A stretch of DNA of 64,000 nt from positions 310,001 to 374,000 of the IMG/VR virus record IMGVR_UViG_3300028558_000016, one strand, 5' to 3'. Of this stretch, positions 7,362 through 64,000 are shown piece after piece. The position numbers and the translations under genes were made by a program. The first letter of the stretch is position 1, and every line of letters starts with the position of its first letter. The notes beneath the pieces were generated by a model. That model ran no database searches and was not told the origin of the DNA. It saw only the letters and a list, made by a program, of their open reading frames with translations.

Positions 7362-8044
7362 AAACGACAGACAAATACGTATTATTTTATACTGAGGTAT
7401 TTTCTCAGTGGCATCCTTCCAATTTTGAAGTAGGAGGTAAAAAATTCTGCACAGCAGAACAATTCATGATGTATTTCAAAGCATTAACGTTCGGTGATCA
7501 AGAGATTGCAGACAAGATATTAGCAACAAATAGTCCACGTGAACAAAAGAAACTTGGACGCGCTGTTAAAGGATTTGATGCTGTTAAATGGAATGCAATA
7601 GCCAAGGAAGTTGTATTCAAAGGAAACAGAGCTAAGTTTCAACAGAATCCAGAAATGTTCGAACAATTAATGGCAACAGGACACAAAGAACTTGTTGAAG
7701 CTTCCCCTTATGATACTATATGGGGAATAGGCTTTGATGAAAATGCTCCTGAAGCTCTTGATAAGTCAACATGGAATGGAACAAATTGGCTTGGCGAAGT
7801 ATTAACAAAGCTTAGAGATGTTCTTAGAAGAGAACAGACAATTCAAAACATAGTGAAACATGGTGAAGCTGAATTGGAAAAATTTGCCAGGGATTATCCA
7901 AATGACATAGGACGATTGTATGAAAGCTATAAAAAATTGAAAACACAATCTTGGTCTGAAGATTTTTTAAGAGGATATTTAGGAGCTATAACAGATTTAA
8001 TTATTATTAAAAAAGGACATTGGGGAGACTCATTTGTAAAATAA
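7358..8044 (+). CDS. NADAR/YbiA family protein
   Basis: FSQW, TAEQFMM, KKLGRAV, LVEASPYDTIWGIG, GTNWLG motifs. Confidence 0.92.
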   Translation: MKTTDKYVLFYTEVFSQWHPSNFEVGGKKFCTAEQFMMYFKALTFGDQEIADKILATNSPREQKKLGRAVKGFDAVKWNAIAKEVVFKGNRAKFQQNPEMFEQLMATGHKELVEASPYDTIWGIGFDENAPEALDKSTWNGTNWLGEVLTKLRDVLRREQTIQNIVKHGEAELEKFARDYPNDIGRLYESYKKLKTQSWSEDFLRGYLGAITDLIIIKKGHWGDSFVK

Positions 8045-11226: not shown

Positions 11227-12690
11227 ATGGAAAATGATAAAAAATATTGCTTGGTGATGTTTCCTTATCCGTCTGGAGATGGATTGCACATTGGACATTG
11301 CTACAACTACTTGATAGTTGATAGCTATTGTCGTTGGATGAAGAGAAAAGGAATTGAAGTGTTTCAACCATTTGGTTATGACGCTTTCGGTTTGCCTGCG
11401 GAGAATTATGCGATCAAGCATAACAGAGATCCAAAAGAAGTCACCTATGAAAACATAGAAAATTTCAGAAGGCAGATGAAGAGATTGGATACTAATTATG
11501 AAGAGAAGTTAATTACAGCTGATCCATCTTATTTCAAATGGACACAATGGTTGTTCACAAAGATGTTGGAGAAGGGAATTGCTTACAAGAAATTTCATCC
11601 AGTAAACTTTTGTCCATCTTGCGCAACAGTGATTGCCAATGAGCAGGTGAAGGAAGGAAAATGTGAGAGATGCAATTCAGTTGTTGAGATGAAAAACTTG
11701 AATCAATGGTTCTTCAGAATAACAGACTACACAGATAGGTTGATCAAGAACTTGCAATGGTTGGATTATCCCGAGAAAACCAAGAAGCAACAATTACATT
11801 GGTTGGAGAAGATGAAAGAAAACAAGATCGATTGGTGTGTGTCAAGACAGAGAAAATGGGGATGTCCAATTCCTGTTGAAGGAGAGGAAGATACTTTGGA
11901 CACATTTGTTGACAGCTCATTTTACTACTTGAGATTCTTGACGGATTCTGAAGATGAATTCTTGCCAAGAGAAAAATATAAGCAGGTTGATTTGTACGTC
12001 GGAGGAAATGAACATGCTTGCATGCATTTGATTTATGCAAGATTTGTGAACATGTTCTTGTATGACTTGGGAATTGTTGAACAAGAAGAACCGTTCAAGA
12101 AGTTGATTCATCAGGGAATGATCAAGATGAATGGAACAAAGATGTCCAAGTCTATCGGCAATGTTGTTAATCCGGATGGGTATGATCCAGATGAATTGAG
12201 ATTTTACTTGATGTTCATTGGACATTATTTTGATGGCGGAGATTGGAACGATCAAAACATTGTTGGCATAAGAAAATTCTTTGCACGATGGGATAAGCTT
12301 ACTTTTAGAGAAGCAAAGGAAGGAATTGAATCTATGGATTTGACTGAATTTGAAAACCAGATCGATGGTTATGTGAAAGCTTTCAAGTTCAATAAGGTTG
12401 TTAGTTCATTCATGGAATTTTACAACAATAATAGCAGCAGAAACTTTGACAAGGAAACCAGATTGAAGTTGAGAAGAATGTTGGAGTGTTTTGCGCCAAC
12501 AAGATTTTCTAAAGATGAAAGGCCTCCAGTTGGCATGGATGAATTAAGAAGAAAATCCAATGAGTTGTCTGAGAACGTAAACAAGATTGAAGTAATGGTT
12601 AATAAAATTTTTAAAGATGTTGAACAAAAAGAAAATATCACCGGAATATCCGAGAATACCTCACTTGATGGGGAAGTCAAATCTGTATGA
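11227..12690 (+). CDS. leuS: Minimal leucyl-tRNA synthetase (no CP1 editing domain)
   Basis: MFPYPSG-LHIGH, GYDAFGLPAEN, DWCVSRQRKWG, DTFVDSS, GGNEHA, KMSKS; only 487 aa. Confidence 0.9.
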   Translation: MENDKKYCLVMFPYPSGDGLHIGHCYNYLIVDSYCRWMKRKGIEVFQPFGYDAFGLPAENYAIKHNRDPKEVTYENIENFRRQMKRLDTNYEEKLITADPSYFKWTQWLFTKMLEKGIAYKKFHPVNFCPSCATVIANEQVKEGKCERCNSVVEMKNLNQWFFRITDYTDRLIKNLQWLDYPEKTKKQQLHWLEKMKENKIDWCVSRQRKWGCPIPVEGEEDTLDTFVDSSFYYLRFLTDSEDEFLPREKYKQVDLYVGGNEHACMHLIYARFVNMFLYDLGIVEQEEPFKKLIHQGMIKMNGTKMSKSIGNVVNPDGYDPDELRFYLMFIGHYFDGGDWNDQNIVGIRKFFARWDKLTFREAKEGIESMDLTEFENQIDGYVKAFKFNKVVSSFMEFYNNNSSRNFDKETRLKLRRMLECFAPTRFSKDERPPVGMDELRRKSNELSENVNKIEVMVNKIFKDVEQKENITGISENTSLDGEVKSV

Positions 12691-13432: not shown

Positions 13433-13738
13433 ATGAATGATGAAGATAAAAAAATAAAGGGATCATTGTTTTTCTTGTACATCGGCAAGCTTAAAGAATT
13501 GGGTTTGATAGAAGGTGGCGCAGGAGATTTGACCATGAAAGGTTTTGACATTGCCATTGATGCCTATAACAGTGGACATAGATTGTCAGATGAGGAGATT
13601 AGTAATTTTCTCGAAGCCGCTCCTGGAATGGACGATGACGACACAATAGAGGCAGCATTTGGAATGATAGCCAAGATGCAAGAAATTGGATTTGATGGAA
13701 TGAAAGAATTGGTTGAACGAGTAAAGAAAACATTATGA
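13433..13738 (+). CDS. Hypothetical protein
   Basis: ORF. Confidence 0.6.
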   Translation: MNDEDKKIKGSLFFLYIGKLKELGLIEGGAGDLTMKGFDIAIDAYNSGHRLSDEEISNFLEAAPGMDDDDTIEAAFGMIAKMQEIGFDGMKELVERVKKTL

Positions 13739-14445
13739 AAAAGAAATTAGTGGTGTTTAGCGGTGCAGGAGTTTCTGCTGAGAGCGGAATTCCTACATTC
13801 AGAGATTCAAATGGTCTTTGGGAAAACCATAAGATGGAAGATGTTGCTACTCCAGAAGGATGGGAGAAAAACAGAGAGCTTGTTCTCAACTTCTACAATC
13901 TTATGAGAACGAAACTCAAAGCAGTTGTTCCGAATAAAGCTCACAATATAATTGCAGAGCTTGAAGAACATTTTGAAGTTACAGTCATCACACAAAACAT
14001 AGATGACTTGCATGAGAGAAGCGGCTCAAAGAAGGTCATACATCTTCATGGAGAATTAATGAAGAGCAGAAGCACATTTAATCCAAATCTAAAATACGAG
14101 TGTACTGGAAATATAAACATAGGTGACAAATGTGAGAAAGGTTCTCAATTGAGGCCTGACATAGTTTGGTTTCATGAAAATGTTTATCACCTTGACACTG
14201 CGGCTGAATTGGTAGAACAGTGCGATATTCTTCTTGTTGTTGGAACTTCATTAAATGTTTGGCCTGCAGCAGGATTGTTATATGTGACGAAACCGGAAAC
14301 TGAAATATATTGCATTGATCCAAAAACAGTTGTTGGAAGTGATATTCAAGTTACTCACATAAAGAAGAAAGCGAGTGAAGGGATGGAGAAATTTAAAAAG
14401 ATTATTCTCGAGAAAAAAGATAAGAAAGAAAATTGCTGTTTATAA
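13735..14445 (+). CDS. cobB: Sir2/CobB NAD-dependent deacylase
   Basis: GAGVSAESGIPTFR, TQNIDDLHE, HLHG, LRPDIVWF, VGTS. Confidence 0.95.
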   Translation: MKKKLVVFSGAGVSAESGIPTFRDSNGLWENHKMEDVATPEGWEKNRELVLNFYNLMRTKLKAVVPNKAHNIIAELEEHFEVTVITQNIDDLHERSGSKKVIHLHGELMKSRSTFNPNLKYECTGNINIGDKCEKGSQLRPDIVWFHENVYHLDTAAELVEQCDILLVVGTSLNVWPAAGLLYVTKPETEIYCIDPKTVVGSDIQVTHIKKKASEGMEKFKKIILEKKDKKENCCL

Positions 14446-17600: not shown

Positions 17601-18548
17601 ATGAAAGAAATAATATTACCGGTAGGACTTCCTGCAGCAGGAAAATCCACAATAGTAAATGATTACGTCAGCCAGGGGTTTGCTAAACTTTCGAGAGATG
17701 AAATTGGAGGAGGTCTTGAAGTAGACGGAAAAGTAAATACAAAACTCAAGGATTGGATCCGAATGGGCAAGGAACAAATAATAATGGATGCTACTTACAT
17801 GACTAAGGAAGTTAGGAAGCATGTTATAGACATTGCGAAGAAGAATGGATATAAAGTAACATGCGTTCACATTGCAACATCAATAGAAGATTCTCAATTT
17901 AATGCAGTTTCGAGAATGATCAACAGGCATGGAAAACTATTTCAACACGCAGACGATTATACCAAGGCAAAAGATCCTAACATGTTTCCAGTTGCTGCCT
18001 TATACAAAGCGAATAAAATAATCGAAAAGCCAACCATGTCAGAAGGATTCGACGAGGTTAAAATAGTTCCTTTCAAAAGGAAATTAAACGGCTACACAAA
18101 CAAAGCAATATTATTTGATTATGATGGAACACTAAGACAGACTAAAAATGCCGATTCATTATATCCAACAGATCCAAGCGACATTGAAATTCTTCCTGGG
18201 AGAACTGAAAAGATCAATGAATTGAAAAAAGAAGGTTACATCATACTCGGTGTTTCAAATCAAAGTGGTGTTGCTAAAGGAGTATTGACTTACGAAATGG
18301 CCGATAAGTGTTTCAAGAAAACAAATGAGCTTTTAGGTGTTGACATCGATTACAGATTTTGTTCTCACAAGGTTCCACCTATCACATGTTATTGCAGAAA
18401 ACCAGGAGTTGGATTTGGGGTTGAGTTCATCGAGAAATATAAATTGGATCCATCACAATGTATCATGGTTGGAGATATGAAATCCGATGAGACCTTCGCA
18501 AAGAGATGTGGTTTTAAATTTGTTCACGTAGATAAATTCTTTAAATGA
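17601..18548 (+). CDS. Polynucleotide kinase/3'-phosphatase (P-loop kinase + HAD IIIA)
   Basis: GLPAAGKS Walker A; FDYDGTL, SNQSG, CRKP, MVGD..SD. Confidence 0.85.
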   Translation: MKEIILPVGLPAAGKSTIVNDYVSQGFAKLSRDEIGGGLEVDGKVNTKLKDWIRMGKEQIIMDATYMTKEVRKHVIDIAKKNGYKVTCVHIATSIEDSQFNAVSRMINRHGKLFQHADDYTKAKDPNMFPVAALYKANKIIEKPTMSEGFDEVKIVPFKRKLNGYTNKAILFDYDGTLRQTKNADSLYPTDPSDIEILPGRTEKINELKKEGYIILGVSNQSGVAKGVLTYEMADKCFKKTNELLGVDIDYRFCSHKVPPITCYCRKPGVGFGVEFIEKYKLDPSQCIMVGDMKSDETFAKRCGFKFVHVDKFFK

Positions 18549-44838: not shown

Positions 44839-45246
44839 ATGGAATTAAAAGATTTTATAAAAACCGTATTCGAGAAACCCGAAGAATATTTAGAACTGAG
44901 ATCTGAAAAGGCAAAGTTCTTCTTCATGACACAGAGATTCATGAGCATTGCTTTCCCTATTCAGGCACAAGCGTTCAACCATATAAGAATCCCTCAAGCA
45001 GAAACAATGGATTATTGGCATGAAAGCATGACGAAGCTTTACAAGAAGACTCCACCATGGATATACACTAAAACCAAGAAGGCTGAAAAGAAAAAAGCGA
45101 AGGAAGATATGCCTTCAGATGAAGCTGTCAACTATTACCTTGAAAGGATGAAAATGTCTAAAAGAGAGCTCACCGATGCCATAAAATTATTTGGTGAAGA
45201 AGCCATTGAACCCATCAGAAGAATAGAAGCTATCATGAAGGAATAG
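44839..45246 (+). CDS. Hypothetical protein (possible clamp-loader small subunit-like); TAG stop
   Basis: Size and FFMTQRFMS..WIY pattern; weak. Confidence 0.4.
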   Translation: MELKDFIKTVFEKPEEYLELRSEKAKFFFMTQRFMSIAFPIQAQAFNHIRIPQAETMDYWHESMTKLYKKTPPWIYTKTKKAEKKKAKEDMPSDEAVNYYLERMKMSKRELTDAIKLFGEEAIEPIRRIEAIMKE

Positions 45247-47620: not shown

Positions 47621-47700
47621 TTTTTTTCAATTAGATTATTATTTTGCTATATTTGTATCTGTTAGTCGTATCTGATAATGTTAAACTAAAAAAAAGAAAA

Positions 47701-47955
47701 ATGAACATTTTTGTAAGCAATCTGAACTTCAAGATGACTGAAGATCAGCTAAGAGAAGAGTTCGAGAAATACGGAGACGTAAGCTCGGCCAAGATCATCA
47801 AGGACAGGGATTCCGGAAGAAGCAAAGGCTTTGGTTTCGTAGAAATGCCTGAAACAGAAGATGCCAATGAGGCAATAAAAGAATTAAACGGAGCAGAGAT
47901 CAATGGCCGTGCAATCGTTGTTAACGAAGCGCGTCCAAAGACAGCATCACGATAA
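47701..47955 (+). CDS. RRM RNA-binding protein
   Basis: MNIFVSNL (RNP2), KGFGFVEM (RNP1). Confidence 0.95.
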   Translation: MNIFVSNLNFKMTEDQLREEFEKYGDVSSAKIIKDRDSGRSKGFGFVEMPETEDANEAIKELNGAEINGRAIVVNEARPKTASR

Positions 47956-47979
47956 TATTCTCTTCGCGAAAAGAACAAG

Positions 47980-48012
47980 AAAACCTCTGTACGAAAGTGC
48001 AGAGGTTTTTTT
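47980..48012. terminator. Bidirectional terminator
   Basis: AAAACCTCTGTAC-GAAA-GTGCAGAGGTTTTTT between convergent genes. Confidence 0.8.
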
Positions 48013-48020
48013 ATTTGCAG

Positions 48021-48092
48021 AACTCCAAGTGGGGATCGAACCCACGACCAAAGGTTTTAGAGACCTACGTTCTACCACTGAACTATTGGAGC
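48021..48092 (-). tRNA. Amber suppressor tRNA (anticodon CUA)
   Basis: GCTCCAA-TA-GTTC AGTGGTA GAAC-G-TAGGT CTCTAAA ACCTT-TGGTC-GTGGG TTCGATC CCCAC-TTGGAGT-T. Confidence 0.9.
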
Positions 48093-48093
48093 A

Positions 48094-49107
48094 TTAAGAG
48101 AAGATTTCTTTAATGTGAGAGTCTAATGTTTTTTCATCGAAATGTGACAGCAATTCTTGTTCTGAGATCATTTTAATCATTCCACCCATTTCAGTTATTT
48201 TGGAAATAACATTTTCGTACCAATAGGCTTCCGTCTGTCCTGTATTTTTAATTTTGAATATTGGACCCTTTGTTTGTTTTGAAAAACCTACAAACTCAAA
48301 ATCACTTGTGAAGTTCATCATGAGTCTGTCATCAGCAGGATCTTCAAGACCTACAATGTTTGCATACCACGTTAGGTCTAATATTTTGGTTGCATTTTCA
48401 AACGAAGGTGTTTTGCTTTGTATTTGTAAATTACGTACATTTACTCCGTGCATCGTAGTGTCAAGTTGTAATTTTCCATAGTATATTAATCCGTAAGAAT
48501 AATTATATCCTTGCCTATTGCTGCAGGTATCACCTTTGGCAGTGTCTTGACATAAAAATATTTGGCCACCTTCTAATGTTATTTTTCCTTTAGCAGGTTT
48601 ATAACCGCTTCCGGCATGATCGATTTCTCCTACGAACATTTGTCCTTGGTAAAAATCTTCTACGACTAATTCTGATTGTGGCTTGTTGATAGGTGAAAAT
48701 TGTTCAGTCATTTTAATAGGTTTTTTCGTAAATTTATCTTCCATAACAGATCTCATCAACCATTGTTTTTCTAAAAGATTAGCAGGTCTGCAATTTCTTC
48801 CAGTTATCCAAGGAGTGCATTCATGAATTTTACCTTTGTTATTTGAATCTTTCCTGAATGTTTCTGTTACGTCAGAAGATTCAGTTACATGAGTAATGGT
48901 TGACACATAATAATGAGAATGTGCACGATCTTTATCGTCGGTATGCTCTTTAAATTTGAACACAATCTCGAGATCCTTTTGTATTCCATCAGCATCATCC
49001 AACATTTCGTGACAGTGATAAATTTCTCCAGGTACAAGGTCCTCAACCTTAAGCGATTCCATTTTAATCTGTTTAAATGCGTAGCTTAAAACCTCTACCA
49101 TGAACAT
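48094..49107 (-). CDS. Hypothetical protein
   Basis: ORF; true start may be the downstream MESLKV. Confidence 0.65.
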   Translation of the reverse strand: MFMVEVLSYAFKQIKMESLKVEDLVPGEIYHCHEMLDDADGIQKDLEIVFKFKEHTDDKDRAHSHYYVSTITHVTESSDVTETFRKDSNNKGKIHECTPWITGRNCRPANLLEKQWLMRSVMEDKFTKKPIKMTEQFSPINKPQSELVVEDFYQGQMFVGEIDHAGSGYKPAKGKITLEGGQIFLCQDTAKGDTCSNRQGYNYSYGLIYYGKLQLDTTMHGVNVRNLQIQSKTPSFENATKILDLTWYANIVGLEDPADDRLMMNFTSDFEFVGFSKQTKGPIFKIKNTGQTEAYWYENVISKITEMGGMIKMISEQELLSHFDEKTLDSHIKEIFS

Positions 49108-49582
49108 TTAGAATTTCAATGCTGCTATCTTGTTTTAAATAAGCTCTCAGCTTTGTAATGTAAACATCCATGCTTCGGCTGTTGTAATAATTGATGTCTC
49201 TCCAAATTTCTTTCAACGCAACATTTCGTTCAAGCTCAGTGTTCATGCAAAGCATTTTGAGTAATTGAGTTTCTTTGTTTGTCAATTTCTTGTCAATTGA
49301 ATTTAGAGTTAAAATTCTCTTGTTTTCATTGAACATGTATTTACCAATTTTGAAATTGACTTCATCATTGGTTCTGATTTTAGTATCAAGACTCATGTCC
49401 TTCATCATTGTTTCCATCATAGACTCTTCGGTCCTGCCATTGAATATCATGACATTCGCGTCGATGTCCTCGATCCCTGCTTCCTTTAAGTTGAACAGTA
49501 TCGGTTCGTTGTTTTTAAGCTTCTCGATATTCTTATCGCTCAAGCCTAAAATTATTGTGTTTCCTACTTTTGCTTTTATCAT
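49073..49582 (-). CDS. OmpR/PhoB-type winged-helix DNA-binding protein lacking a receiver domain
   Basis: LTNKETQLL..IW..RSMDVYITKLR..IEILNVHGRGFKL. Confidence 0.85.
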   Translation of the reverse strand: MIKAKVGNTIILGLSDKNIEKLKNNEPILFNLKEAGIEDIDANVMIFNGRTEESMMETMMKDMSLDTKIRTNDEVNFKIGKYMFNENKRILTLNSIDKKLTNKETQLLKMLCMNTELERNVALKEIWRDINYYNSRSMDVYITKLRAYLKQDSSIEILNVHGRGFKLRI

Positions 49583-50313
49583 GGTTTTTTGTATAATTCT
49601 GGTCTGTCATGTAATCCATTGAATTGGATAAATGATTTTGCTATCTTATCAAAGTCCTTGTCATTTTTAATTTCATATCTTTCCACGGCATTAAAAAATC
49701 CATCGTCGGCCGTGCATCCGCCATAACTCTCACCGATGTAAAGAAGATACTGTCCAGGCTTCATGGCATTCCATATCATGTGAGCCAACGGATCCATATA
49801 AGGCCAAGACAACACGAACATATCTGCATCTTCTGCCTGCTTGACGAATCTAACCGCATCCTCTTGTTTAACTATTGGAAGAAAATTGTTTGATTTCTTG
49901 TAATGGGCCCACGTCTTATTGTCAACGGCTTCCTTTAATGGTATTCCATATTTTTTCATCCAATGAGAGAACCAGCCTGTTCCGCAACACAATTCGTGCA
50001 CAACCTTCATCTTCTTCTTATCACAGAACTTCTTCATGGCAGTAAGCATCTCGTCATTATAAGCGACGAACGAATGTTCGAGATACATCTCTCTAATAAC
50101 GAAAGGACTCATCCATTTGTTCTCATCCTTGATTATATCCTTAATGGATTTAATTGACAATAGGTTGTCATACGGGTCTCTTACATGCTGTGTGATTACT
50201 TTTCTTGATGGAAGCTTCTCAGACGACAAATCGAATGTAGAACGGATTGCTTCCGTAACATCCTGGTCGAGGGTTTCTATCAGTGAACCGTATCTTTTTT
50301 CAGCCCGTGTCAT
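49579..50313 (-). CDS. Methyltransferase-like protein
   Basis: ELCCGTGW, LSWP, YIGE..GGCT. Confidence 0.65.
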   Translation of the reverse strand: MTRAEKRYGSLIETLDQDVTEAIRSTFDLSSEKLPSRKVITQHVRDPYDNLLSIKSIKDIIKDENKWMSPFVIREMYLEHSFVAYNDEMLTAMKKFCDKKKMKVVHELCCGTGWFSHWMKKYGIPLKEAVDNKTWAHYKKSNNFLPIVKQEDAVRFVKQAEDADMFVLSWPYMDPLAHMIWNAMKPGQYLLYIGESYGGCTADDGFFNAVERYEIKNDKDFDKIAKSFIQFNGLHDRPELYKKP

Positions 50314-54548: not shown

Positions 54549-55451
54549 ATGGACAACTTGTATAATAGTAATGGTTTGATTTTTTGGTCAGAAGCGGAGA
54601 TAAAACTTCGTGAGATGTTCGAGAACTATTTCGTTCAAAAACTGAAGACCAATCTCAAATCTCAGAACAGAGCATTCGACCTTTATAAGTGCGAAGCTCC
54701 ATTATTGACTCCGGTCGATTTAATAAACCCGAATTATACCGAAGAGGATGTTTGGATTCAAGCCAATTTAAGAGGTGCAATGCCGGTTGTTCGTTATGCT
54801 GAAAAGAAATCGAGCATTGACGATGACATGGAAAAATTAATGTCATTGAGCAAAGAACACATGCGTTCCGAAGAGGATAGTTATTACAAACGCATGCTTG
54901 AATTGAACGATCAAATTACAAATGGAAAATTGAATATGGACCTTGCCATTGAAATGGGTGCGGTATATACTGAGATGTATCCTAATCATTCATTAGTATT
55001 AAGGCCTGAAACCACAATGGGAAGTTATGCTTATGCAAGACATTTGCTTAATCCGCACAATGCAGTTAAGATAATGCCACCATTGGTTGTATATCAACAT
55101 GGAAAATCATTTAGAAGAGAACAGGATCAGCCCACAAAATACATGAGGCTTAAGGAATTCTATCAATTGGAATTCCAGATACTATATTCACCTTCTACCA
55201 AGAACGACTATTCTCTAACGTTGATCCCTACAGTAAAACAAATGATAGAGGATATGATTGGTCCGTGTCATGTGGAAGATTCAGACAGACTTCCAAGCTA
55301 TGCTGAATGGACAAGAGATGTCATCTGCGATAAAACAGGAATGGAAGTTTGTTCAATGTCAAAAAGAACTGACTACGAGAACATGAACGTCATTGAGGTG
55401 GCAATAGGAACCGACCGGTGCATATATAATTTCAATTTGAAGAATGGATAA
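54549..55451 (+). CDS. GlyRS-like class II aaRS catalytic core without anticodon-binding domain
   Basis: LRPETTMG, GKSFRRE..RLKEFYQLEFQ (motif 2), VIEVAIGTDR (motif 3); ends 10 aa later. Confidence 0.8.
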   Translation: MDNLYNSNGLIFWSEAEIKLREMFENYFVQKLKTNLKSQNRAFDLYKCEAPLLTPVDLINPNYTEEDVWIQANLRGAMPVVRYAEKKSSIDDDMEKLMSLSKEHMRSEEDSYYKRMLELNDQITNGKLNMDLAIEMGAVYTEMYPNHSLVLRPETTMGSYAYARHLLNPHNAVKIMPPLVVYQHGKSFRREQDQPTKYMRLKEFYQLEFQILYSPSTKNDYSLTLIPTVKQMIEDMIGPCHVEDSDRLPSYAEWTRDVICDKTGMEVCSMSKRTDYENMNVIEVAIGTDRCIYNFNLKNG

Positions 55452-55800
55452 CGAATATGGAAGCTGCATGTTTTCTATGATGTCATTGAGACATCTTGGA
55501 CAAACTTTAAAATGGGAAGCTTCTGATATTGCTTTGAAACATGTATGTCCATTTTGTAGCGGACAGGCAAAGATAAGAGCTGAACTTAGAGACTTTGGAA
55601 TTTATGGAGAATCAATACAGGCATTCTATGCCTGTGTTAAATGCGAGGAAGAGTTTACGACAACGGAAATTGATGAGATAAATATAACGCCTCTTCTTAA
55701 AAAGAAGCGTGGAACGAGAAAAGTAGTGGAAATAATAAAATCGGTATTAAAACTTAAATTAAAAAACAATGGCACAAGAAGTAACAGACAGCAATCTTGA
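55444..55800 (+). CDS. Zn-ribbon protein
   Basis: CPFC...CVKC..FTT.E. Confidence 0.6.
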   Translation: MDNEYGSCMFSMMSLRHLGQTLKWEASDIALKHVCPFCSGQAKIRAELRDFGIYGESIQAFYACVKCEEEFTTTEIDEINITPLLKKKRGTRKVVEIIKSVLKLKLKNNGTRSNRQQS

Positions 55801-56083
55801 GGAAACTCTTAAGACGGAAAAATTAGTGGTTCTCGATTTTTGGGCACCATGGTGTGGACCTTGCAGGACGATTGGTCCTGTCATAGAAGAACTACACACT
55901 GAGTATGGAGAAAATGTGGTAATTGGAAAAGTCAACGTTGATGACAATTCTGAAGCTGCCACAAAATACGGAATCAGAAGCATTCCAGCAATTTACTTCA
56001 TTAAGAATGGAGAAGTTGTTGACAAGATAATTGGCGCAGCTCCTAAAACGGAGTTTGTGGCAAGGATCGAGGCTAACAAATAA
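55769..56083 (+). CDS. trxA: Thioredoxin
   Basis: DFWAPWCGPC. Confidence 0.97.
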   Translation: MAQEVTDSNLEETLKTEKLVVLDFWAPWCGPCRTIGPVIEELHTEYGENVVIGKVNVDDNSEAATKYGIRSIPAIYFIKNGEVVDKIIGAAPKTEFVARIEANK

Positions 56084-56084
56084 T

Positions 56085-56636
56085 ATGGCGAACAATAATT
56101 TCAAAAGGCCTTACAGGCCAATTCAGAAACAAAGGGAACACAAGATCAATGAAGAGATCAGACATCCCAATGTGAGAGTTACAGGTGATGACATTGAGTC
56201 ACAGGTTGTAACCATCCAAGAGGCATTGCGCATGGCAAGGGAAGCTGGAGTTGATCTCGTTGAGATTGCTCCAAGCGCAAACCCACCTGTGTGCAAGATA
56301 ATCGAATATGGAAAACTCCTTTACGAGAAAAAGAGAAAAGACAAGGAGAATAAAAAGAACCAAGATCAGGTTGAAATAAAAGAACTTCGATTGACACCAA
56401 GCACAGACGAACATGATTTGCAATTCAAATGCAACAATGCAATGAAATGGTTAGCTGATGGAAATAAAGTGAAAGCCGTTGTAGTATTCAAAGGAAGAAT
56501 GATCAAATATAAAGAGATGGGAGAAATCCTTTTGCTTAAACTTTCTGTGATGCTCGAAGACCATGGAAAAGTTGAACAGCTACCAAAACTCGAAGGCTTC
56601 AAAATGACCATGATGGTCATTCCAAAAAAGAAGTAA
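56085..56636 (+). CDS. infC: Translation initiation factor IF-3
   Basis: INEEIR, DLVEIAP.ANPPVCKI..YGK, IKELRL.P..DEHD, GNKVK..FKGR. Confidence 0.95.
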   Translation: MANNNFKRPYRPIQKQREHKINEEIRHPNVRVTGDDIESQVVTIQEALRMAREAGVDLVEIAPSANPPVCKIIEYGKLLYEKKRKDKENKKNQDQVEIKELRLTPSTDEHDLQFKCNNAMKWLADGNKVKAVVVFKGRMIKYKEMGEILLLKLSVMLEDHGKVEQLPKLEGFKMTMMVIPKKK

Positions 56637-57207: not shown

Positions 57208-58275
57208 ATGAAAAAATCTGTAATAAAAGTTTTTTATACAGAAAAACAAGTAAACACTAACGCAAACATAGAAGCTGCATCGAAATCAAAATCACCACTC
57301 AAACCGGTTCTTTTGATGAAAGCTTTAGATGTTCTTGGATATGGAAAAAATCTGGATATTGATCCAGATTTTTTTCCATTTAAAGACGAGGACTTCCTGC
57401 TTGCGCACACTAAAAATTACGTTGAAGCATTTTTCAATGGTGTTCAACCATTGTGTCAAAGTAATTTCTTACCGTGGAGCCAAGAATTGGCAGACTCAGT
57501 TCGTTACACTAATGCGAGTTTGTATAACGCAATTAGATATGCTTACTTAAATCCTGACCAAGTTACATTAAGTCCTACATCAGGATTCCATCATGCAATG
57601 CCTCACAGAGGCGATGGATTTTGTACATTCTCAGGACAGGTTATTGCTGCAGAAAAAATGTATCAAGAGTTTGGAGTGTCTGGTGCTGTTCTTGATTTGG
57701 ATGGTCACACAGGAAATTCCATAGATGATGCTCGTGGTTTTGCTAAAACAATTGATTTAGCAATTCCGCACGAATATAATTTTGCTCAGCTTAAAGGTAG
57801 TGATAAACACTATCTCGACTCTCTTTTAGAAGCAATGGATAAAATTGAAACAGGTGTATTGGAAAATAAAATACATTATCTAATGTGGTGCCACGGTGCA
57901 GACTCTCACGAGGATGATGATTTTGGTGGACAGGTTGACACAGAATATTGGGTTAAATGTTCTGAAGCATTTTATGCTTGGGTGAATCAATTGGATGCTA
58001 AATTGATTGCAATGGGAAGAAAACCTCTTCCAGTCATTTTAAGTTTATTTGGAGGTTATCGTGATGATGATTATTATTCAGTTATTTCGTTGCACATAAA
58101 AGATTTGACAACATGTCTTAATCTTCTTTGTGGAGAAAACATAAATTATGATGTGAACGTAAAAGATAAACGTCCAACAATAAAACGTAAACCACCTGAA
58201 AAATGGTTTGATGGAATGCCGCTATCTCTTTTGAATGTTCTTTACCCAGGAAAATATGACGATATAAACACATAG
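57208..58275 (+). CDS. Histone deacetylase-family (Zn-dependent) protein
   Basis: GFHHA..GFCTF, LDLDGH.GN, GADSH.DD, GGY; TAG stop. Confidence 0.88.
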   Translation: MKKSVIKVFYTEKQVNTNANIEAASKSKSPLKPVLLMKALDVLGYGKNLDIDPDFFPFKDEDFLLAHTKNYVEAFFNGVQPLCQSNFLPWSQELADSVRYTNASLYNAIRYAYLNPDQVTLSPTSGFHHAMPHRGDGFCTFSGQVIAAEKMYQEFGVSGAVLDLDGHTGNSIDDARGFAKTIDLAIPHEYNFAQLKGSDKHYLDSLLEAMDKIETGVLENKIHYLMWCHGADSHEDDDFGGQVDTEYWVKCSEAFYAWVNQLDAKLIAMGRKPLPVILSLFGGYRDDDYYSVISLHIKDLTTCLNLLCGENINYDVNVKDKRPTIKRKPPEKWFDGMPLSLLNVLYPGKYDDINT

Positions 58276-58349
58276 GGCTTGGCCGGAATCAGGGGACTGC
58301 GGATTCTAAACCCGCTGAACCGTGGGTTCGACTCCCACCCAGGCTACCA
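58276..58349 (+). tRNA. Second CUA-anticodon tRNA with degenerate D-arm
   Basis: GGCTTGG/CCAGGCT-A-CCA acceptor, GCGGA-TTCTAAA-CCCGC arm, GTGGG-TTCGACT-CCCAC T-arm. Confidence 0.7.
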
Positions 58350-58714: not shown

Positions 58715-59026
58715 ATGTTTGATTTTCACCAAAAAGATACACACGCAACTAATTTCTCTATAGACAAAAAAGATCTATATGAGAAGGCAATGGAAATTTT
58801 TAAAAGCTATAATCCAAAAATAAAAATATGGATTGAAGATACAGCATTTGATTCTTTCGGAAGACCCTATTATGACCATTTGAGTTTACATACAGATCAA
58901 GGTCATAAAGGTAAAATTAAATGGATAGGATTCTTTTCTACCATCAATAAAAGAAAGCTCCTGGCTGGAGAAATAAAACCAAAACAAACAATCAAAGAAA
59001 AACTTAAAGTATTTTTAAACCTATGA
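58715..59026 (+). CDS. Hypothetical protein
   Basis: ORF. Confidence 0.55.
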   Translation: MFDFHQKDTHATNFSIDKKDLYEKAMEIFKSYNPKIKIWIEDTAFDSFGRPYYDHLSLHTDQGHKGKIKWIGFFSTINKRKLLAGEIKPKQTIKEKLKVFLNL

Positions 59027-59964
59027 AAACGTTAACAGAGAACAAGTCCAAAACTTTATCTAAGTTTTTGGAAACCCTAAGGGATAAAAGAGGATTTGAC
59101 GCTGAAATTTATACAGAAAGAAAAGCGTATGCAATAAATAAATTCTTTAGAGAAAATAATCTTGATTGTGCTGTCATTGGACTTTCTGGAGGTGTCGATA
59201 GTGCTGTTGCATTTTCTCTTCTCGAATTTGCTTCTCGCAGACCAGACTCACCTATCAAAAAAATTCTTGCATTAGCAATGCCAATATATGGAAATGGAAC
59301 AACGAACCAAACTGATGCTACTAATAAAGCAACGAGGTTCATAACAAATTTTCTTGGTACAAAAAGAAAAAGGTACAATGATAAAGTAGAGTTTGAAATG
59401 TTTGATCTTTCGCATGCCTACGAATCATATCAATATGGACATGAAACAGACGCATGGTCTAACGGACAATTAGCGAGCATTGTAAGAACTCCGTTTCTAT
59501 ATTATAATGCCGCATTGTTACAAACAAAAGGATATAAATCAATTGTGGTTGGAACTACAAATCGTGATGAAGGTTCTTACATTGGCTTCTTTGGAAAAGC
59601 TTCTGACGCAATGGTCGATCTTCAACCGATAGCAGATATACACAAAAGCGAAGTGTATCAGGTTGCAAAACTTTTAGAAGTTAGTGATGAAATAATAAAT
59701 GCAACTCCGGCTGGTGACGTTCACGATGGCAGAGTTGATGAAGAAATGATTGGTGCTCCATATTGGTTTCTTGAATTATTCCTTCTTCAAAAACAATACA
59801 AAGAGACTGCCAAGTTAGAAACGTTTGAAGACGGAGAAATTTATGGAAAATATTACGCATCAATAGAAAGCATTCACGAAAAAAATAAACACAAATACCA
59901 GGTAGGTTCACCAGCACATTTTATTGATGTGATGGAACGTAAAATAGAAGGAGGTTGGCAATGA
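59023..59964 (+). CDS. nadE: NH3-dependent NAD+ synthetase
   Basis: GLSGGVDSAV, VGTTNRDE..GFFGK..D, PIADIHKSEV, DEEMIG. Confidence 0.9.
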   Translation: MKTLTENKSKTLSKFLETLRDKRGFDAEIYTERKAYAINKFFRENNLDCAVIGLSGGVDSAVAFSLLEFASRRPDSPIKKILALAMPIYGNGTTNQTDATNKATRFITNFLGTKRKRYNDKVEFEMFDLSHAYESYQYGHETDAWSNGQLASIVRTPFLYYNAALLQTKGYKSIVVGTTNRDEGSYIGFFGKASDAMVDLQPIADIHKSEVYQVAKLLEVSDEIINATPAGDVHDGRVDEEMIGAPYWFLELFLLQKQYKETAKLETFEDGEIYGKYYASIESIHEKNKHKYQVGSPAHFIDVMERKIEGGWQ

Positions 59965-60731: not shown

Positions 60732-60979
60732 ATTGGAAAGTAATATTCTTCAAAGAATATAATGATTGGGTTCCATATCAAAATGAATCTGTATGTGAAT
60801 GTGTTGAAGAAGCTTGTCTTAAAAAAGTCTACAATCAATTAAATCCTGGAATTGAAGCTGACCATGATTATAAAATTGAATTTAAAGATGGTGAAATCGT
60901 TCATATTCTTTTTGGAGTAATAGTTTCTGGAAAAATTAAGTTTACTAATAAATTTGCTAATGAATTGGAAAGTAAATAG
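60728..60979 (+). CDS. Hypothetical protein (TAG stop)
   Basis: ORF. Confidence 0.5.
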   Translation: MNWKVIFFKEYNDWVPYQNESVCECVEEACLKKVYNQLNPGIEADHDYKIEFKDGEIVHILFGVIVSGKIKFTNKFANELESK

Positions 60980-62423
60980 AGATACATTTTATAAAGAACT
61001 TCTTCCAGTCCTTGGAGAAAAAGGAATTGCTGAAGCCGGTTTCTTTGAGGATGCTGCAACGAAAGACGAAGATGTCTTAAAGACCACAAAGGTTTTGTGC
61101 ACACCTCTTTCTTTTTTAAAACCTGCAACAGGACATCCTTGCATATTGCTAACGACTGGTTCTTTTTGTCCATTGCATCCAGGCCACATCAATATGATGG
61201 AAAAAGCCAAGGAGCATCTTGAAAAAAATGGATACAATGTAATTGGTGGTTTCATTTCACCTGGACACGATGAATACATATCTGCCAAGAATAAAGAAAA
61301 AGCAATTCCAATACACTATAGAATAAGAACCATAACTGAGATGATTAAAAACCACGATTGGCTTTCTGTCGATCCATGGGAAGGAATGTTCTGTAAGGTT
61401 GCTGTAAATTTCACAGATGTTTATATAAGGCTTGAGGCATACATCAGCGAACACCTAAAGAAAGACATTCCAATATTCTTTGTTAGTGGTGGTGATAATG
61501 CGAGATTTGCTTTGACCTTCATGAAGAAAGGAAATTGTGTGATAGTTAACAGACCTCCGTATGACGATAAATTCGAACATTATAAAAAAGTTTTAAAGGA
61601 TTGTCCTAACATCCATTTCGTTGAAGGTGGAATTCCTATATCTTCAACTGAATTAAGAAAGGAAGCTTTTGTTCCAGATGAAAAGAAAAACTTATTAATA
61701 AGAGTTGAAAACACTGAGAAGAGAGGAGTTCTAAGAATAATGTATAAATATTTCAATAATATAGAAAAGAAGGAACTACACAGTCAGAAAAAACACTTTT
61801 ATGGAAAGATGTCTCTTGGCGAGATGATAAGTCTTGACTCACTTCTTAAATCAGTGCACAACTTGAAAATATCAAGATCCTATGACATTTTCGGTGCAAA
61901 GAAGATGGGATTCACAAATAGACCAGGAACTCCATCATTAGAGGAACAACTGTCTGAAATAGAGAATGGGGAATACACTCTGTTCGATGATGACATCCAC
62001 AGTGGTTCAACCATGAGATTTGCTAAATCGTTAATAGAGGGAACAGGCTCTAAGGTGAAAGAAGTGACATCATTAAACATCTCACCAGATGGTTTTGAGA
62101 TTCTCGATTCAAGAGATTTTTTCATAGGAGGAAAGAACAATGGCCTTGTGATTAAAATGCCTGATGGAAAAAACGTCAGAGCTCCTTATGTTTATCCTTA
62201 TGTTTGTCCGTTTATTAGAGGCTCAATAGACAGTCCAATGCAGTTTTCAATAGATATTTGGAAGATGAACATGGATCTATTTGAAAAGACTAATCAAACA
62301 TTGGGTGACATGCCATTCCTCCAAGACCTATTCAAAAGAGCTGGATTTAGTTTGACAGATTCAATGTATGACATCTGTAAATGGCATCATGATTATTTGG
62401 TTTTGGTACTTTTCACCAAATAA
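60960..62423 (+). CDS. NMNAT-like cytidylyltransferase fused to a PRTase-like domain
   Basis: TGSFCPLHPGH, SPGHDEY, VDPWE, GGD, ISSTELR; LFDDDIHSGST. Confidence 0.8.
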   Translation: MNWKVNRDTFYKELLPVLGEKGIAEAGFFEDAATKDEDVLKTTKVLCTPLSFLKPATGHPCILLTTGSFCPLHPGHINMMEKAKEHLEKNGYNVIGGFISPGHDEYISAKNKEKAIPIHYRIRTITEMIKNHDWLSVDPWEGMFCKVAVNFTDVYIRLEAYISEHLKKDIPIFFVSGGDNARFALTFMKKGNCVIVNRPPYDDKFEHYKKVLKDCPNIHFVEGGIPISSTELRKEAFVPDEKKNLLIRVENTEKRGVLRIMYKYFNNIEKKELHSQKKHFYGKMSLGEMISLDSLLKSVHNLKISRSYDIFGAKKMGFTNRPGTPSLEEQLSEIENGEYTLFDDDIHSGSTMRFAKSLIEGTGSKVKEVTSLNISPDGFEILDSRDFFIGGKNNGLVIKMPDGKNVRAPYVYPYVCPFIRGSIDSPMQFSIDIWKMNMDLFEKTNQTLGDMPFLQDLFKRAGFSLTDSMYDICKWHHDYLVLVLFTK

Positions 62424-62968: not shown

Positions 62969-63349
62969 ATGAAGTAGATTAACACATACCCAAAATTAAC
63001 CATCGTAACAAGACAAGATCTTGCACCTGGTTACCAGTTAGTACAAACGGCCCATGCCATGGCTGATTTTGCAACTTCTTATCCTAAGGAGTTTCAACAA
63101 TGGCATTCCACCTCCAATTATTTAGCGTGCCTATCTGTTAAGGATGAAAATTCTTTACAAGCTCTTTCACATAAACTTATGTGTGAAGATATTAAGCACA
63201 TCACATTCACTGAACCCGATCTCGGAAATCAGATCACTGCAATTGCTATTGAGCCAACTGATATGGCTCGAAGAATATGTAGCTCATTTCCATTGGCATT
63301 AAAGGAATGCACAAACGGATTAAACAAACATTCAATAATAAAACAATGA
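62969..63349 (+). CDS. PTH2-like peptidyl-tRNA hydrolase with in-frame TAG at codon 3
   Basis: ATG AAG TAG ATT..PKLTIVTRQDLAPGYQLVQTAHA..FTEPDLGNQITAIA..FPLAL. Confidence 0.75.
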
Positions 63350-63928: not shown

Positions 63929-63998
63929 GGCGATGTGACCGAGTGGTAGGTACAGATCCGCAAGATCTGGTACGGGGGTTCGAATCCTTCCATTGCCT
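63929..63998 (+). tRNA. tRNA-Cys(GCA)
   Basis: GGCGATG/CATTGCC-U73; CAGAT-CCGCAAG-ATCTG. Confidence 0.88.
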
Positions 63999-64000
63999 CA

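What the first reader, a model, noticed from the sequence alone, without database searches (positions are those of the whole stretch)
48021..48092. Canonical amber suppressor tRNA in a non-recoded phage, with Gly-like acceptor features
Seen: a complete cloverleaf on the minus strand with anticodon loop CUCUAAA. The anticodon arm resembles tRNA-Trp (AGGU-CUCCAAA-ACCU with CCA changed to CUA), while the acceptor has G1, C2-G71 and U73. Established: U73 and C2-G71 are bacterial tRNA-Gly identity elements; suppressor tRNAs are typical of TAG-recoded phages, but this window uses standard coding. Inference: a dedicated regulatory suppressor whose amino acid is uncertain.
Basis: partly seen in the sequence, partly recalled or inferred. 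Interest (0 to 1): 0.7.

Follow-up and report, generated by a model that had tools for sequence, protein, structure and literature searches.

The report
Amber suppressor tRNA, huge soil phage
A 482-kb soil phage that reads its own genes with the standard code nevertheless carries a well-conserved tRNA that decodes the UAG stop codon; it is one of two clear UAG-reading tRNAs (plus one doubtful), which is a known but uncommon situation thought to precede genetic-code change in phages.

Summary
Window 48021-48092 (-) is a high-scoring tRNA (Rfam 67.7 bits) with anticodon CUA. It is identical in contigs from four rhizosphere samples. Three related phages have it at the same genomic spot, with compensatory stem changes and an unchanged CUCUAAA loop.

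Its D arm and anticodon-stem framework is that of bacterial tRNA-Trp: 80 of 81 cellular matches carry CCA. Its acceptor end is not Trp-like. G1 and U73 are invariant in the four orthologs; G1.U72 and C2-G71 occur in three of four.

The genome (482,156 bp, 55 tRNA genes by ARAGORN) is not TAG-recoded. TAG ends about 5.6% of crudely called genes, and one TAG stop is confirmed by orthologs. I found no gene that needs UAG read-through.

The tRNA is not alone. A paralog (C, G73) lies 278 bp beyond the window, and a doubtful tRNA-like sequence (B) is at 58276-58349. All three sit in a region rich in translation genes: IF3, a PTH2-like gene, and a GlyRS-like core with no anticodon-binding domain.

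The inserted amino acid is unresolved; Gln and Gly are the leading candidates. "Gly-like" is only weakly supported and "dedicated regulatory suppressor" is not supported. This is a new member of a known kind (phage suppressor tRNAs, including those in standard-code phages).

The parts
48021..48092 (-). tRNA A: amber-reading tRNA, anticodon CUA at 48058-48060. Trp-type body; acceptor with G1.U72, C2-G71 and U73; C74 at 48020.
   Evidence: orthologs; covariation; contigs from four samples.
47974..48015 (.). Hairpin flanked by an A run and a U run. It looks like a two-way intrinsic terminator between tRNA A (-) and the convergent RRM gene (+).
   Evidence: -16.2 kcal/mol, z -5.6. A hairpin sits at the same place after the orthologs in L204 and L205.
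48094..49107 (-). 337-aa ORF of unknown function. Its TAA stop lies 1 nt before tRNA A, so the two are probably co-transcribed.
   Evidence: no family hit; homologs directly precede the tRNA orthologs.
49073..49582 (-). 169-aa protein with an OmpR-type winged-helix (Trans_reg_C) domain, in the same leftward gene string.
   Evidence: E 4.6e-11; also present in L204.
49579..50313 (-). 244-aa ORF, first gene of the leftward string. I used it to fetch the related loci.
47644..47955 (+). RRM-domain protein gene, convergent with tRNA A.
   Evidence: RRM_1, E 2.4e-25; conserved neighbour in L204-L208.
54549..55451 (+). 300-aa GlyRS-like class II catalytic core. Motifs 2 and 3 are present; there is no anticodon-binding domain.
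   Evidence: NF003211, E 4e-12; pLDDT 86.7; top fold matches are GlyRS.
56031..56636 (+). Phage-encoded translation initiation factor IF3.
   Evidence: TIGR00168, E 4.7e-58.
58276..58349 (+). tRNA-like B: ARAGORN-only call with anticodon CUA, encoded CCA and a degenerate D arm. It abuts the TAG stop of the deacetylase-like gene 57208-58275.
   Evidence: no Rfam tRNA match; absent in relative L200.
63929..63999 (+). tRNA-Cys(GCA). It marks the place of the paralogous amber tRNA C, which lies just past the window end (genome 374278-374351, about window 64278-64351).
   Evidence: The Cys + CUA pair is conserved in L200.
44839..45246 (+). 135-aa gene that ends in TAG where three orthologs end in TAA, TGA and TAA. 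This shows that TAG is a true stop in this phage.

Best explanation
Window 48021-48092 (-) is a functional, selected tRNA gene that decodes UAG.

Origin (inferred): it descends from a bacterial-type tRNA-Trp with CCA changed to CUA. Its acceptor end has been remodelled away from Trp identity: G73 has become U73, and the 1:72 pair is G.U in three of four orthologs.

Expression (inferred from anatomy): it is transcribed as the last element of a short leftward gene string (244-aa ORF, wHTH protein, 337-aa ORF, then the tRNA) that ends at a hairpin terminator. The usual tRNA end-processing enzymes would cut it out. Its 3' end would be completed by a CCA-adding enzyme, which the phage encodes. The A36-A37-A38 sequence is the kind of site that is usually modified in tRNAs reading U-starting codons.

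Action (inferred): once charged, it competes with release factor 1 at UAG.

Role: the phage's own reading frames do not need it, because TAG is a rare but real stop. So it is an accessory function rather than part of a recoded gene set. The most likely effects are read-through of UAG stops in the infected cell and tolerance of amber mutations. This is the state that Borges et al. proposed as the step before TAG recoding.

Amino acid: unresolved. Glutamine is favoured by precedent, because U35 draws GlnRS and Trp-derived amber suppressors are charged with Gln in E. coli. Glycine is the main alternative, because U73 is invariant and a GlyRS-like core without an anticodon-binding domain is encoded nearby.

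Shown: the gene, its conservation, its Trp-type body, the standard coding of the genome, and the company of a second amber tRNA. Inferred: expression, charging, the inserted residue and the biological role.
For: - Gene quality.
- Orthologs at the syntenic place in three related phages, with an invariant CUCUAAA loop, G1 and U73, and compensatory changes in the stems.
- Identical sequence in contigs from four samples.
- Trp-type body: 80 CCA + 1 TCA among 81 cellular matches.
- Paralog C: 80% identical body, a different acceptor and G73. Its ortholog in L200 keeps C1-G72, G2-C71, C3-G70 and G73.
- Standard code. Treating TAG as sense does not lengthen ORFs more than treating TGA as sense. Stops are TAA 466, TGA 162, TAG 37 of 665 crude genes. 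No read-through candidate survived inspection. One TAG stop is confirmed by orthologs.
- ORF-tRNA-terminator layout conserved.
- CCA-adding enzyme in the genome.
[quoted passage not shown] E. coli tRNA-Trp(CUA) is charged by GlnRS, and G73 plus CCA are the Trp identity elements (PMC2965240).
Against: - No RNA data: no RNA run was listed. Expression, processing and charging are therefore unshown.
- Among the phage's own tRNAs, U73 is confined to Gly, Thr, Cys and one atypical Asn; its Gln tRNAs have A73. In E. coli, Gln has G73. This weakens the glutamine guess.
- The tRNA is absent from four of eight related syntenic loci, so its benefit is conditional.
- About 5% of the phage's own genes end in TAG, with no extra back-up stops. 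Strong suppression would therefore also extend phage proteins.
- My gene calls are crude (longest ORFs, no trained model). A very small number of in-frame TAGs in short genes could have been missed.
- The host is unknown.
Confidence: 0.6

Rival explanations
1. Orthogonal pair. The phage's GlyRS-like core (window 54549-55451) has no anticodon-binding domain, so it would recognise tRNAs by the acceptor end alone. It charges tRNA A (U73, C2-G71) with glycine, and UAG is read as Gly. By the same logic, the 243-aa TrpRS-like protein could charge paralog C (G73) with Trp.
For: - U73 is invariant in four orthologs; C2-G71 is present in three.
- In this phage U73 otherwise occurs only in Gly, Thr and Cys tRNAs and one atypical Asn tRNA. 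The phage has no ThrRS or CysRS.
- The GlyRS-like core has conserved motifs 2 and 3, ends right after motif 3, gives a confident model and has GlyRS as its top fold matches.
- It lies 6.5 kb from A here and 4.2 kb from the A ortholog in L205.
- Elsewhere in the genome, synthetase genes sit beside their cognate tRNA clusters.
- The TrpRS-like protein is 243 aa and matches only the first two thirds of the profile.
Against: - The mini-GlyRS family is large (1673 hits).
- It is found without tRNA A within the 11.4 kb held of L199, which covers the syntenic place.
- It sits next to four ordinary tRNA-Gly genes in a 492-kb relative.
- A lacks G1-C72 and G3-C70, and one ortholog has A2-U71.
- No activity is known for any of these truncated enzymes.
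- Adjacency at 4-6 kb is weak evidence in a region dense with translation genes.
Confidence: 0.15
2. Dedicated regulatory suppressor. The tRNA exists to read one or a few programmed in-frame UAG codons in phage genes and so time their expression.
For: - This is how suppressor tRNAs are thought to work in recoded phages.
- The tRNA lies at the edge of a structural gene block.
- Three TAG-terminated genes are followed in frame by the next gene.
Against: - Those three cases have their own start codons and unrelated or no domains on the two sides.
- Other candidates are antisense artefacts or tandem paralogs.
- The number of in-frame followers is what chance gives.
- A TAG stop is confirmed by orthologs.
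- Relatives with the same neighbouring genes lack the tRNA.
Confidence: 0.08
3. Passenger. The gene is a neutral leftover of a recoded ancestor or of horizontal transfer. It is poorly expressed or poorly charged and has no role in infection.
For: - Patchy presence among relatives.
- A weak anticodon stem with a U.U mismatch; the single-sequence minimum-energy fold is not a cloverleaf.
- No RNA data.
Against: - Compensatory changes in all four stems with an invariant anticodon loop across orthologs whose flanking proteins are 63-74% identical.
- Fixed position at the end of an ORF with a conserved terminator.
- A second, independently conserved amber tRNA.
Confidence: 0.1
4. The genome, or a late-gene subset of it, is in fact TAG-recoded (code 15), and the tRNA is the ordinary tool of that code.
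For: Three CUA calls in one genome. TAG is the rarest stop.
Against: - Coding density is about 91% with the standard code.
- Treating TAG as sense adds no more ORF length than treating TGA as sense in any 10-kb bin.
- There are 37 TAG-terminated ORFs, and those inspected look like ordinary gene ends.
Confidence: 0.02

Closest known systems
Suppressor tRNA(CUA) genes of TAG-recoded phages (crAss-like, Lak and others; genetic code 15)
   Same: A phage-encoded canonical tRNA with anticodon CUA in a low-GC phage where TAG is the rarest stop. It is accompanied by other translation genes.
   Different: Here the genes carry no in-frame TAG and TAG still terminates genes. No RF2 gene is present; the only release-factor homolog is a 139-aa GGQ-domain fragment. 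The source is rhizosphere soil, not gut.
Standard-code relatives of recoded phages that have acquired a suppressor tRNA (Borges et al., 10.1101/2021.08.26.457843)
   Same: A suppressor tRNA in a phage that still uses code 11, with the matching stop codon depleted. This is the proposed intermediate on the way to recoding.
   Different: The example highlighted in that paper is a TGA suppressor in gut 'Agate' phages with recoded close kin. Here it is two clear TAG suppressors (plus one doubtful) in a 482-kb soil phage, and no recoded relative was found.
E. coli su7/supU: tRNA-Trp with CCA changed to CUA
   Same: A bacterial tRNA-Trp body with the single anticodon change C35 to U35, which creates an amber suppressor.
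   Different: su7 keeps the Trp acceptor (A1-U72, G73) and is charged by GlnRS (PMC2965240). tRNA A has G1.U72 and U73, so the same outcome cannot be assumed. Paralog C (G73) is the closer analogue.
tRNA-Pyl (ARAGORN's label for any CUA tRNA)
   Same: Anticodon CUA only.
   Different: tRNA A has a normal D loop with GG, a 5-nt variable loop, a 5-bp anticodon stem and a UUCGAUC T loop. Only a 34-bit, far sub-threshold PylS_Cterm match was seen, on the HisRS-like protein; pylBCD genes were not searched for.

Membership tests
tRNA (Rfam RF00005) | Full-length match to the covariance model above the gathering score | tested here: met
   67.7 bits against a cut-off of 29; model positions 1-71.
tRNA (Rfam RF00005) | Cloverleaf maintained by compensatory changes among homologs | tested here: met
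   98.4% of cells paired; 12 of 21 pairs with double changes; slid controls 48% or less.
Amber suppressor tRNA | Anticodon CUA in a 7-nt loop with U33 and a purine at 37 | tested here: met
   Loop CUCUAAA, invariant in 4 orthologs and 2 paralogs.
Amber suppressor tRNA | Is aminoacylated and inserts a residue at UAG in vivo | not testable with these tools
   No RNA run was listed. This needs a reporter assay and mass spectrometry.
Bacterial tRNA-Trp | Body sequence of the Trp isoacceptor | tested here: met
   The D arm plus anticodon-stem pattern, anticodon free, matched 80 CCA + 1 TCA of 81.
Bacterial tRNA-Trp | Identity elements G73 and anticodon CCA (PMC2965240) | tested here: not met
   U73 and CUA.
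Bacterial tRNA-Gly identity set | Discriminator U73 | tested here: met
   U73 in A and in all three orthologs.
Bacterial tRNA-Gly identity set | C2-G71 | tested here: inconclusive
   Present in A, L204 and L205; A2-U71 in L206.
Bacterial tRNA-Gly identity set | G1-C72, G3-C70, C35 and C36 (identity set recalled from established knowledge) | tested here: not met
   G1.U72, U3-A70, U35 and A36. The phage's own Gly tRNAs do have G1-C72, C2-G71, G3-C70 and U73.
TAG-recoded phage (code 15) | Many genes with in-frame TAG; ORFs lengthen when TAG is read as sense | tested here: not met
tRNA-Pyl | Compact D loop without GG, 3-nt variable loop, 6-bp anticodon stem (features recalled from established knowledge) | tested here: not met
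   Canonical cloverleaf.
Dimeric (alpha2) glycyl-tRNA synthetase, for the neighbouring 300-aa protein | Class II catalytic core with GlyRS-type motifs 2 and 3 | tested here: met
   NF003211 at E 4e-12 but far below its cut-off. Motifs are invariant in 28 homologs. Top fold matches are GlyRS.
Dimeric (alpha2) glycyl-tRNA synthetase, for the neighbouring 300-aa protein | C-terminal anticodon-binding domain (HGTP_anticodon) | tested here: not met
   The protein ends 10 residues after motif 3. PF03129 is found only in the ProRS gene of this genome.

The most novel reading that the evidence does not exclude
The phage runs acceptor-only ('anticodon-blind') charging. Truncated synthetase cores that lack anticodon-binding domains (GlyRS-like 300 aa, TrpRS-like 243 aa) charge dedicated CUA tRNAs whose only conserved identity marks are at the acceptor end: U73 in A and G73 in C. 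UAG in the infected cell would then be read as glycine and/or tryptophan rather than the usual glutamine. That would be a natural set of orthogonal synthetase/suppressor pairs in a phage that has not yet recoded its genes.
Probability: 0.12. Interest if true: 0.85.

Novelty: new member of a known kind. Interest (0 to 1): 0.48.

Why it matters
Phage suppressor tRNAs have mostly been described where the code has already changed. This is a well-supported case of the proposed earlier state. A complete 482-kb soil phage has standard coding, rare but real TAG stops, and two independently conserved amber tRNAs derived from tRNA-Trp with deliberately different acceptor ends. That makes the order of events in stop-codon reassignment testable, namely whether the suppressor comes first and the in-frame codons later. 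The conserved U73 and G73 ends, together with truncated synthetases nearby, give a concrete question for biochemistry: which enzyme charges them, and with what. If natural orthogonal pairs are involved, they would also interest genetic-code engineers.

Tried and rejected
1. **Close DNA relatives.** Megablast against GenBank phages found none. The exact acceptor-stem pattern in IMG/VR found none. A protein-seeded search with the 337-aa neighbour found nothing in IMG/VR and only the source contig in JGI metagenomes. Relatives came only through the protein-cluster index.
2. **In-frame TAG candidates from a codon-usage score.** These turned out to be antisense translations of genes on the other strand. 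I dropped them.
3. **Three TAG stops followed in frame by the next gene.** Pfam found no split domain. A 195-codon open stretch before a TAG is a tandem paralog, not a read-through.
4. **Host tRNA identity rules.** The three genomes reached through loci labelled Bacteroidales, Phocaeicola and Alistipes are 1.1-1.8 Mb bins of doubtful label. I did not use them.
5. **tRNA-like B.** It has no Rfam tRNA match and no ortholog in L200. I treat it as doubtful, not as a third proven suppressor.
6. **The 337-aa upstream ORF.** No family, atlas or fold lead.
7. **Other phages with a similar anticodon and T arm (L031-L033).** These are 60-62% GC phages whose coding status I could not settle.
8. **Complex prediction.** Not run. 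Its RNA controls are shuffles, which any tRNA would beat, so it could not tell tRNA A from tRNA-Gly.
9. **The 492-kb relative.** Its record is not held, so I could not scan it for CUA tRNAs.

Full report
**1. The observation**

ARAGORN finds a tRNA at 48020-48092 on the minus strand with anticodon CTA. The Rfam tRNA model matches 48021-48092 end to end at 67.7 bits, the highest tRNA score in the window.

Read from the sequence:
- The acceptor stem is GCUCCAA/UUGGAGU, so the first pair is a G.U wobble. It is followed by C2-G71 and U3-A70.
- The discriminator is U73.
- The anticodon loop is CUCUAAA.
- The anticodon stem has a U.U mismatch at its top.
- Only the first C of the CCA end is encoded.

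Contigs assembled from four different rhizosphere samples cover the gene without a single difference.

**2. The genome**

The window is bases 310001-374000 of a 482,156-bp virus record that CheckV rates complete. The same contig is a JGI rhizosphere metagenome scaffold.

It carries 55 tRNA genes by ARAGORN and 62 Rfam matches. They are grouped by amino acid and often sit next to a synthetase gene of the same specificity: a LeuRS-like gene with the Leu tRNAs, TyrRS and GluRS with the Tyr and Gln tRNAs, and TrpRS-like and HisRS-like genes with the Trp and His tRNAs. It also encodes a CCA-adding enzyme and a 139-aa release-factor GGQ fragment, but no full release factor.

**3. Not one suppressor but two, perhaps three**

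- **tRNA C** (genome 374278-374351, 278 bp past the window end) scores 71.6 bits. It is 80% identical to tRNA A. It shares the D arm type, anticodon arm, variable loop and T arm, but has a completely different acceptor stem (C1-G72, G2-C71, C3-G70) and G73.
- **B** (window 58276-58349) is called only by ARAGORN. It has an almost unpaired D arm and gets no Rfam tRNA match. It is missing in a relative, where the neighbouring deacetylase-like gene is 75 codons longer. I treat it as doubtful.

**4. Is the phage recoded? No.**

- Stop-to-stop ORF lengths do not grow more when TAG is read as sense than when TGA is, in any 10-kb bin.
- A crude non-overlapping ORF set covers 91% of the genome. It ends in TAA 466 times, TGA 162 times and TAG 37 times (5.6%; 3-5% for longer genes).
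- The stretch after a TAG stop runs into another stop after a median of 8 codons, like TAA (7).
- Every candidate for read-through failed on inspection. Some were separate genes with their own starts and unrelated domains, some were antisense artefacts, and one was a pair of tandem paralogs.
- The 135-aa gene at 44839-45246 ends in TAG exactly where its orthologs in three relatives end in TAA, TGA and TAA.

TAG is therefore a rare but genuine stop here. TAG is also a rare trinucleotide out of frame, so its rarity as a stop is not strong evidence of special avoidance.

**5. Descent of the tRNA**

I built a pattern from the D arm and anticodon stem of tRNA A, with the anticodon and the 26-28 positions left free. 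Eighty have CCA and one (a Mycoplasmataceae bin) has TCA, so all are tRNA-Trp.

Those cellular tRNAs nearly all have A1 or G1 and G73. tRNA A does not.

**6. Conservation**

Homologs of the flanking proteins led to related phage contigs. The tRNA is present in three of them, at the same place: directly after the homolog of the 337-aa ORF, before a hairpin and a convergent RRM gene.

| Locus | Coordinates | Acceptor stem (5'/3') | 1:72 | 2:71 | Discriminator | Note |
|---|---|---|---|---|---|---|
| Window (A) | 48021-48092 (-) | GCUCCAA/UUGGAGU | G.U | C-G | U73 | reference |
| L204 | 1889-1960 | same as A | G.U | C-G | U73 | A28-U42 becomes C-G |
| L205 | 7714-7787 | GCCUCGG/CCGGGGU | G.U | C-G | U73 | |
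| L206 | 3135-3206 | GACUCAG/CUGAGUC | G-C | A-U | U73 | |

- With C and its ortholog in L200 added, the cloverleaf is 98.4% paired and 12 of 21 pairs show double changes. Slid controls reach 48% at most.
- Invariant among the four A orthologs are G1, C5-G68, U73, most of the D arm and the whole anticodon loop.
- C and its ortholog keep C1-G72, G2-C71, C3-G70 and G73 while pairs 5-7 change.
- Both tRNAs are thus under selection for structure, for the CUA anticodon and for their different acceptor ends.
- The tRNA is absent at the corresponding place in four other related loci (L199, L207, L208, L209). It is accessory.

**7. Layout**

The TAA stop of the 337-aa ORF lies 1 nt before the tRNA. 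A strong hairpin flanked by A and U runs follows it (-16.2 kcal/mol, z -5.6). A hairpin is found at the same place in L204 and L205.

In L205 and L206 the upstream ORF actually stops at the tRNA's own U8-A9-G10, which reads TAG. Co-transcription with the upstream genes is the simplest reading, but it is not shown.

**8. Which amino acid?**

Sequence cannot decide this.

*Against Trp:* G73 and CCA, the main bacterial Trp identity elements, are both gone (PMC2965240).

*For Gln:*
- U35 attracts GlnRS.
- E. coli tRNA-Trp(CUA) is charged with Gln (same paper).
- TAG to Gln is the only reassignment seen in phages whose code differs from their host's.

*Against Gln:* the phage's own Gln tRNAs have U1-A72 and A73.

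*For Gly:*
- U73 is invariant. In this phage it otherwise marks only Gly, Thr and Cys tRNAs and one atypical Asn tRNA.
- The phage has no ThrRS or CysRS.
- It does encode, 6.5 kb away, a 300-aa GlyRS-like catalytic core that ends just after motif 3 and so has no anticodon-binding domain. It gives a confident model whose best fold matches are GlyRS, and its motifs are invariant across homologs.

*Against Gly:*
- G1-C72, G3-C70, C35 and C36 are missing, and C2-G71 is not invariant.
- The mini-GlyRS family is large (1673 hits).
- It occurs in L199 with no tRNA A within the 11.4 kb held, which covers the syntenic place.
- It sits beside four ordinary tRNA-Gly genes in a 492-kb relative.

Within the phage's own set, the top five acceptor pairs of A are identical to those of one tRNA-Glu. 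All four Glu tRNAs share G1.U72, but they have A73. This is a lead I could not weigh.

My rough split is Gln 0.3, Gly 0.2, and other or unknown 0.5.

**9. Role**

No phage gene needs the tRNA, and relatives do without it. The best-supported reading is therefore an accessory UAG decoder: it competes with release factor 1, causes read-through of UAG stops in the infected cell, and buffers amber mutations. This is the pre-recoding state proposed by Borges et al..

The region around it is rich in translation functions: IF3, a PTH2-like protein, the mini-GlyRS, tRNA-Cys and the second amber tRNA. That fits a role in reshaping translation during infection, but it shows nothing about timing.

**10. 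Verdict**

The feature is real, conserved and correctly described. The Trp likeness is confirmed, the Gly likeness is weak, and the regulatory reading is unsupported. It is a new member of a known kind, of moderate interest. The more novel reading, acceptor-only charging by truncated synthetases, is not excluded.

Noticed in passing
genome 374278-374351 (about window 64278-64351, just past the end); ortholog L200:11151-11224: A second high-scoring amber tRNA (C, 71.6 bits). It has the same Trp-type body as A but C1-G72, G2-C71, C3-G70 and G73. It lies next to tRNA-Cys in both phages.
   Followed up: yes
window 58276-58349 (+): tRNA-like B with a CUA loop, encoded CCA and an almost unpaired D arm. 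It starts right after the TAG stop of a deacetylase-like gene that is 75 codons shorter than its homolog in L200, which has no B. It may be an insertion remnant.
   Followed up: partly
window 54549-55451 (+): A 300-aa GlyRS-like catalytic core without an anticodon-binding domain. It belongs to a family of about 1,700 short proteins (223-316 aa), many on 460-492 kb contigs. One subgroup has a roughly 75-residue helical insertion.
   Followed up: partly
window 11227-12690; genome about 414.4-415.9 kb; genome 393722-394852: Other shortened synthetase genes sit beside their cognate tRNA clusters: LeuRS-like 487 aa, HisRS-like 258 aa, TrpRS-like 243 aa, and ProRS 385 aa without the editing insert. 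GluRS (519 aa) and TyrRS (406 aa) are full length.
   Followed up: partly
genome 413915, 414375, 386605, 5778, 7373, 6974, 124757, 387507: tRNAs for Trp, His, Asn, Lys, Met, Glu and Gln with 83-92 nt and long variable arms or inserts. These isotypes normally have short variable loops.
   Followed up: no
whole genome, 55 tRNA genes: Almost every tRNA gene encodes the discriminator plus one C only. G1.U72 is found in all four Glu tRNAs, all four Leu tRNAs and two of four Arg tRNAs. A CCA-adding enzyme gene is at genome 307388-308485.
   Followed up: partly
genome 374203-374274; L200:11076-11148: A conserved degenerate tRNA-like element directly 5' of amber tRNA C. It has a 6-nt anticodon loop, an unusual T loop (CUCGUUG) and an acceptor stem resembling that of tRNA A.
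   Followed up: no
L205:7118-7723 with tRNA 7714-7787; L206:2515-3144 with tRNA 3135-3206: In two relatives the ORF upstream of the amber tRNA overlaps it and stops at the tRNA's own U8-A9-G10, which is a TAG codon.
   Followed up: no
window 56031-56636, 55769-56083, 63059-63349, 17601-18548: The phage encodes IF3, a thioredoxin, a weak PTH2-like peptidyl-tRNA hydrolase and a polynucleotide kinase/phosphatase (a tRNA-repair type enzyme).
   Followed up: no
window 2301-4094, 13735-14445, 59023-59964, 60954-62423: A set of NAD salvage and NAD-use genes: nicotinamide phosphoribosyltransferase, a Sir2-type deacylase, NAD synthase and a cytidylyltransferase-like (NMNAT-like) protein.
   Followed up: no
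L031, L032, L033 (IMG/VR contigs, 60-62% GC): Unrelated high-GC phages carry two different CUA tRNAs plus a tmRNA. One has a similar anticodon and T arm with a U1-A72/G73 acceptor; the other has A73.
   Followed up: partly
genome 388791-389843 (GluRS): The phage GluRS matches PDB entries 6b1z and 6brl far better than any other solved GluRS (E 1e-142 against 1e-80). From memory, those are from a Bacteroidota genus, which would hint at the host phylum. I did not verify this.
   Followed up: no
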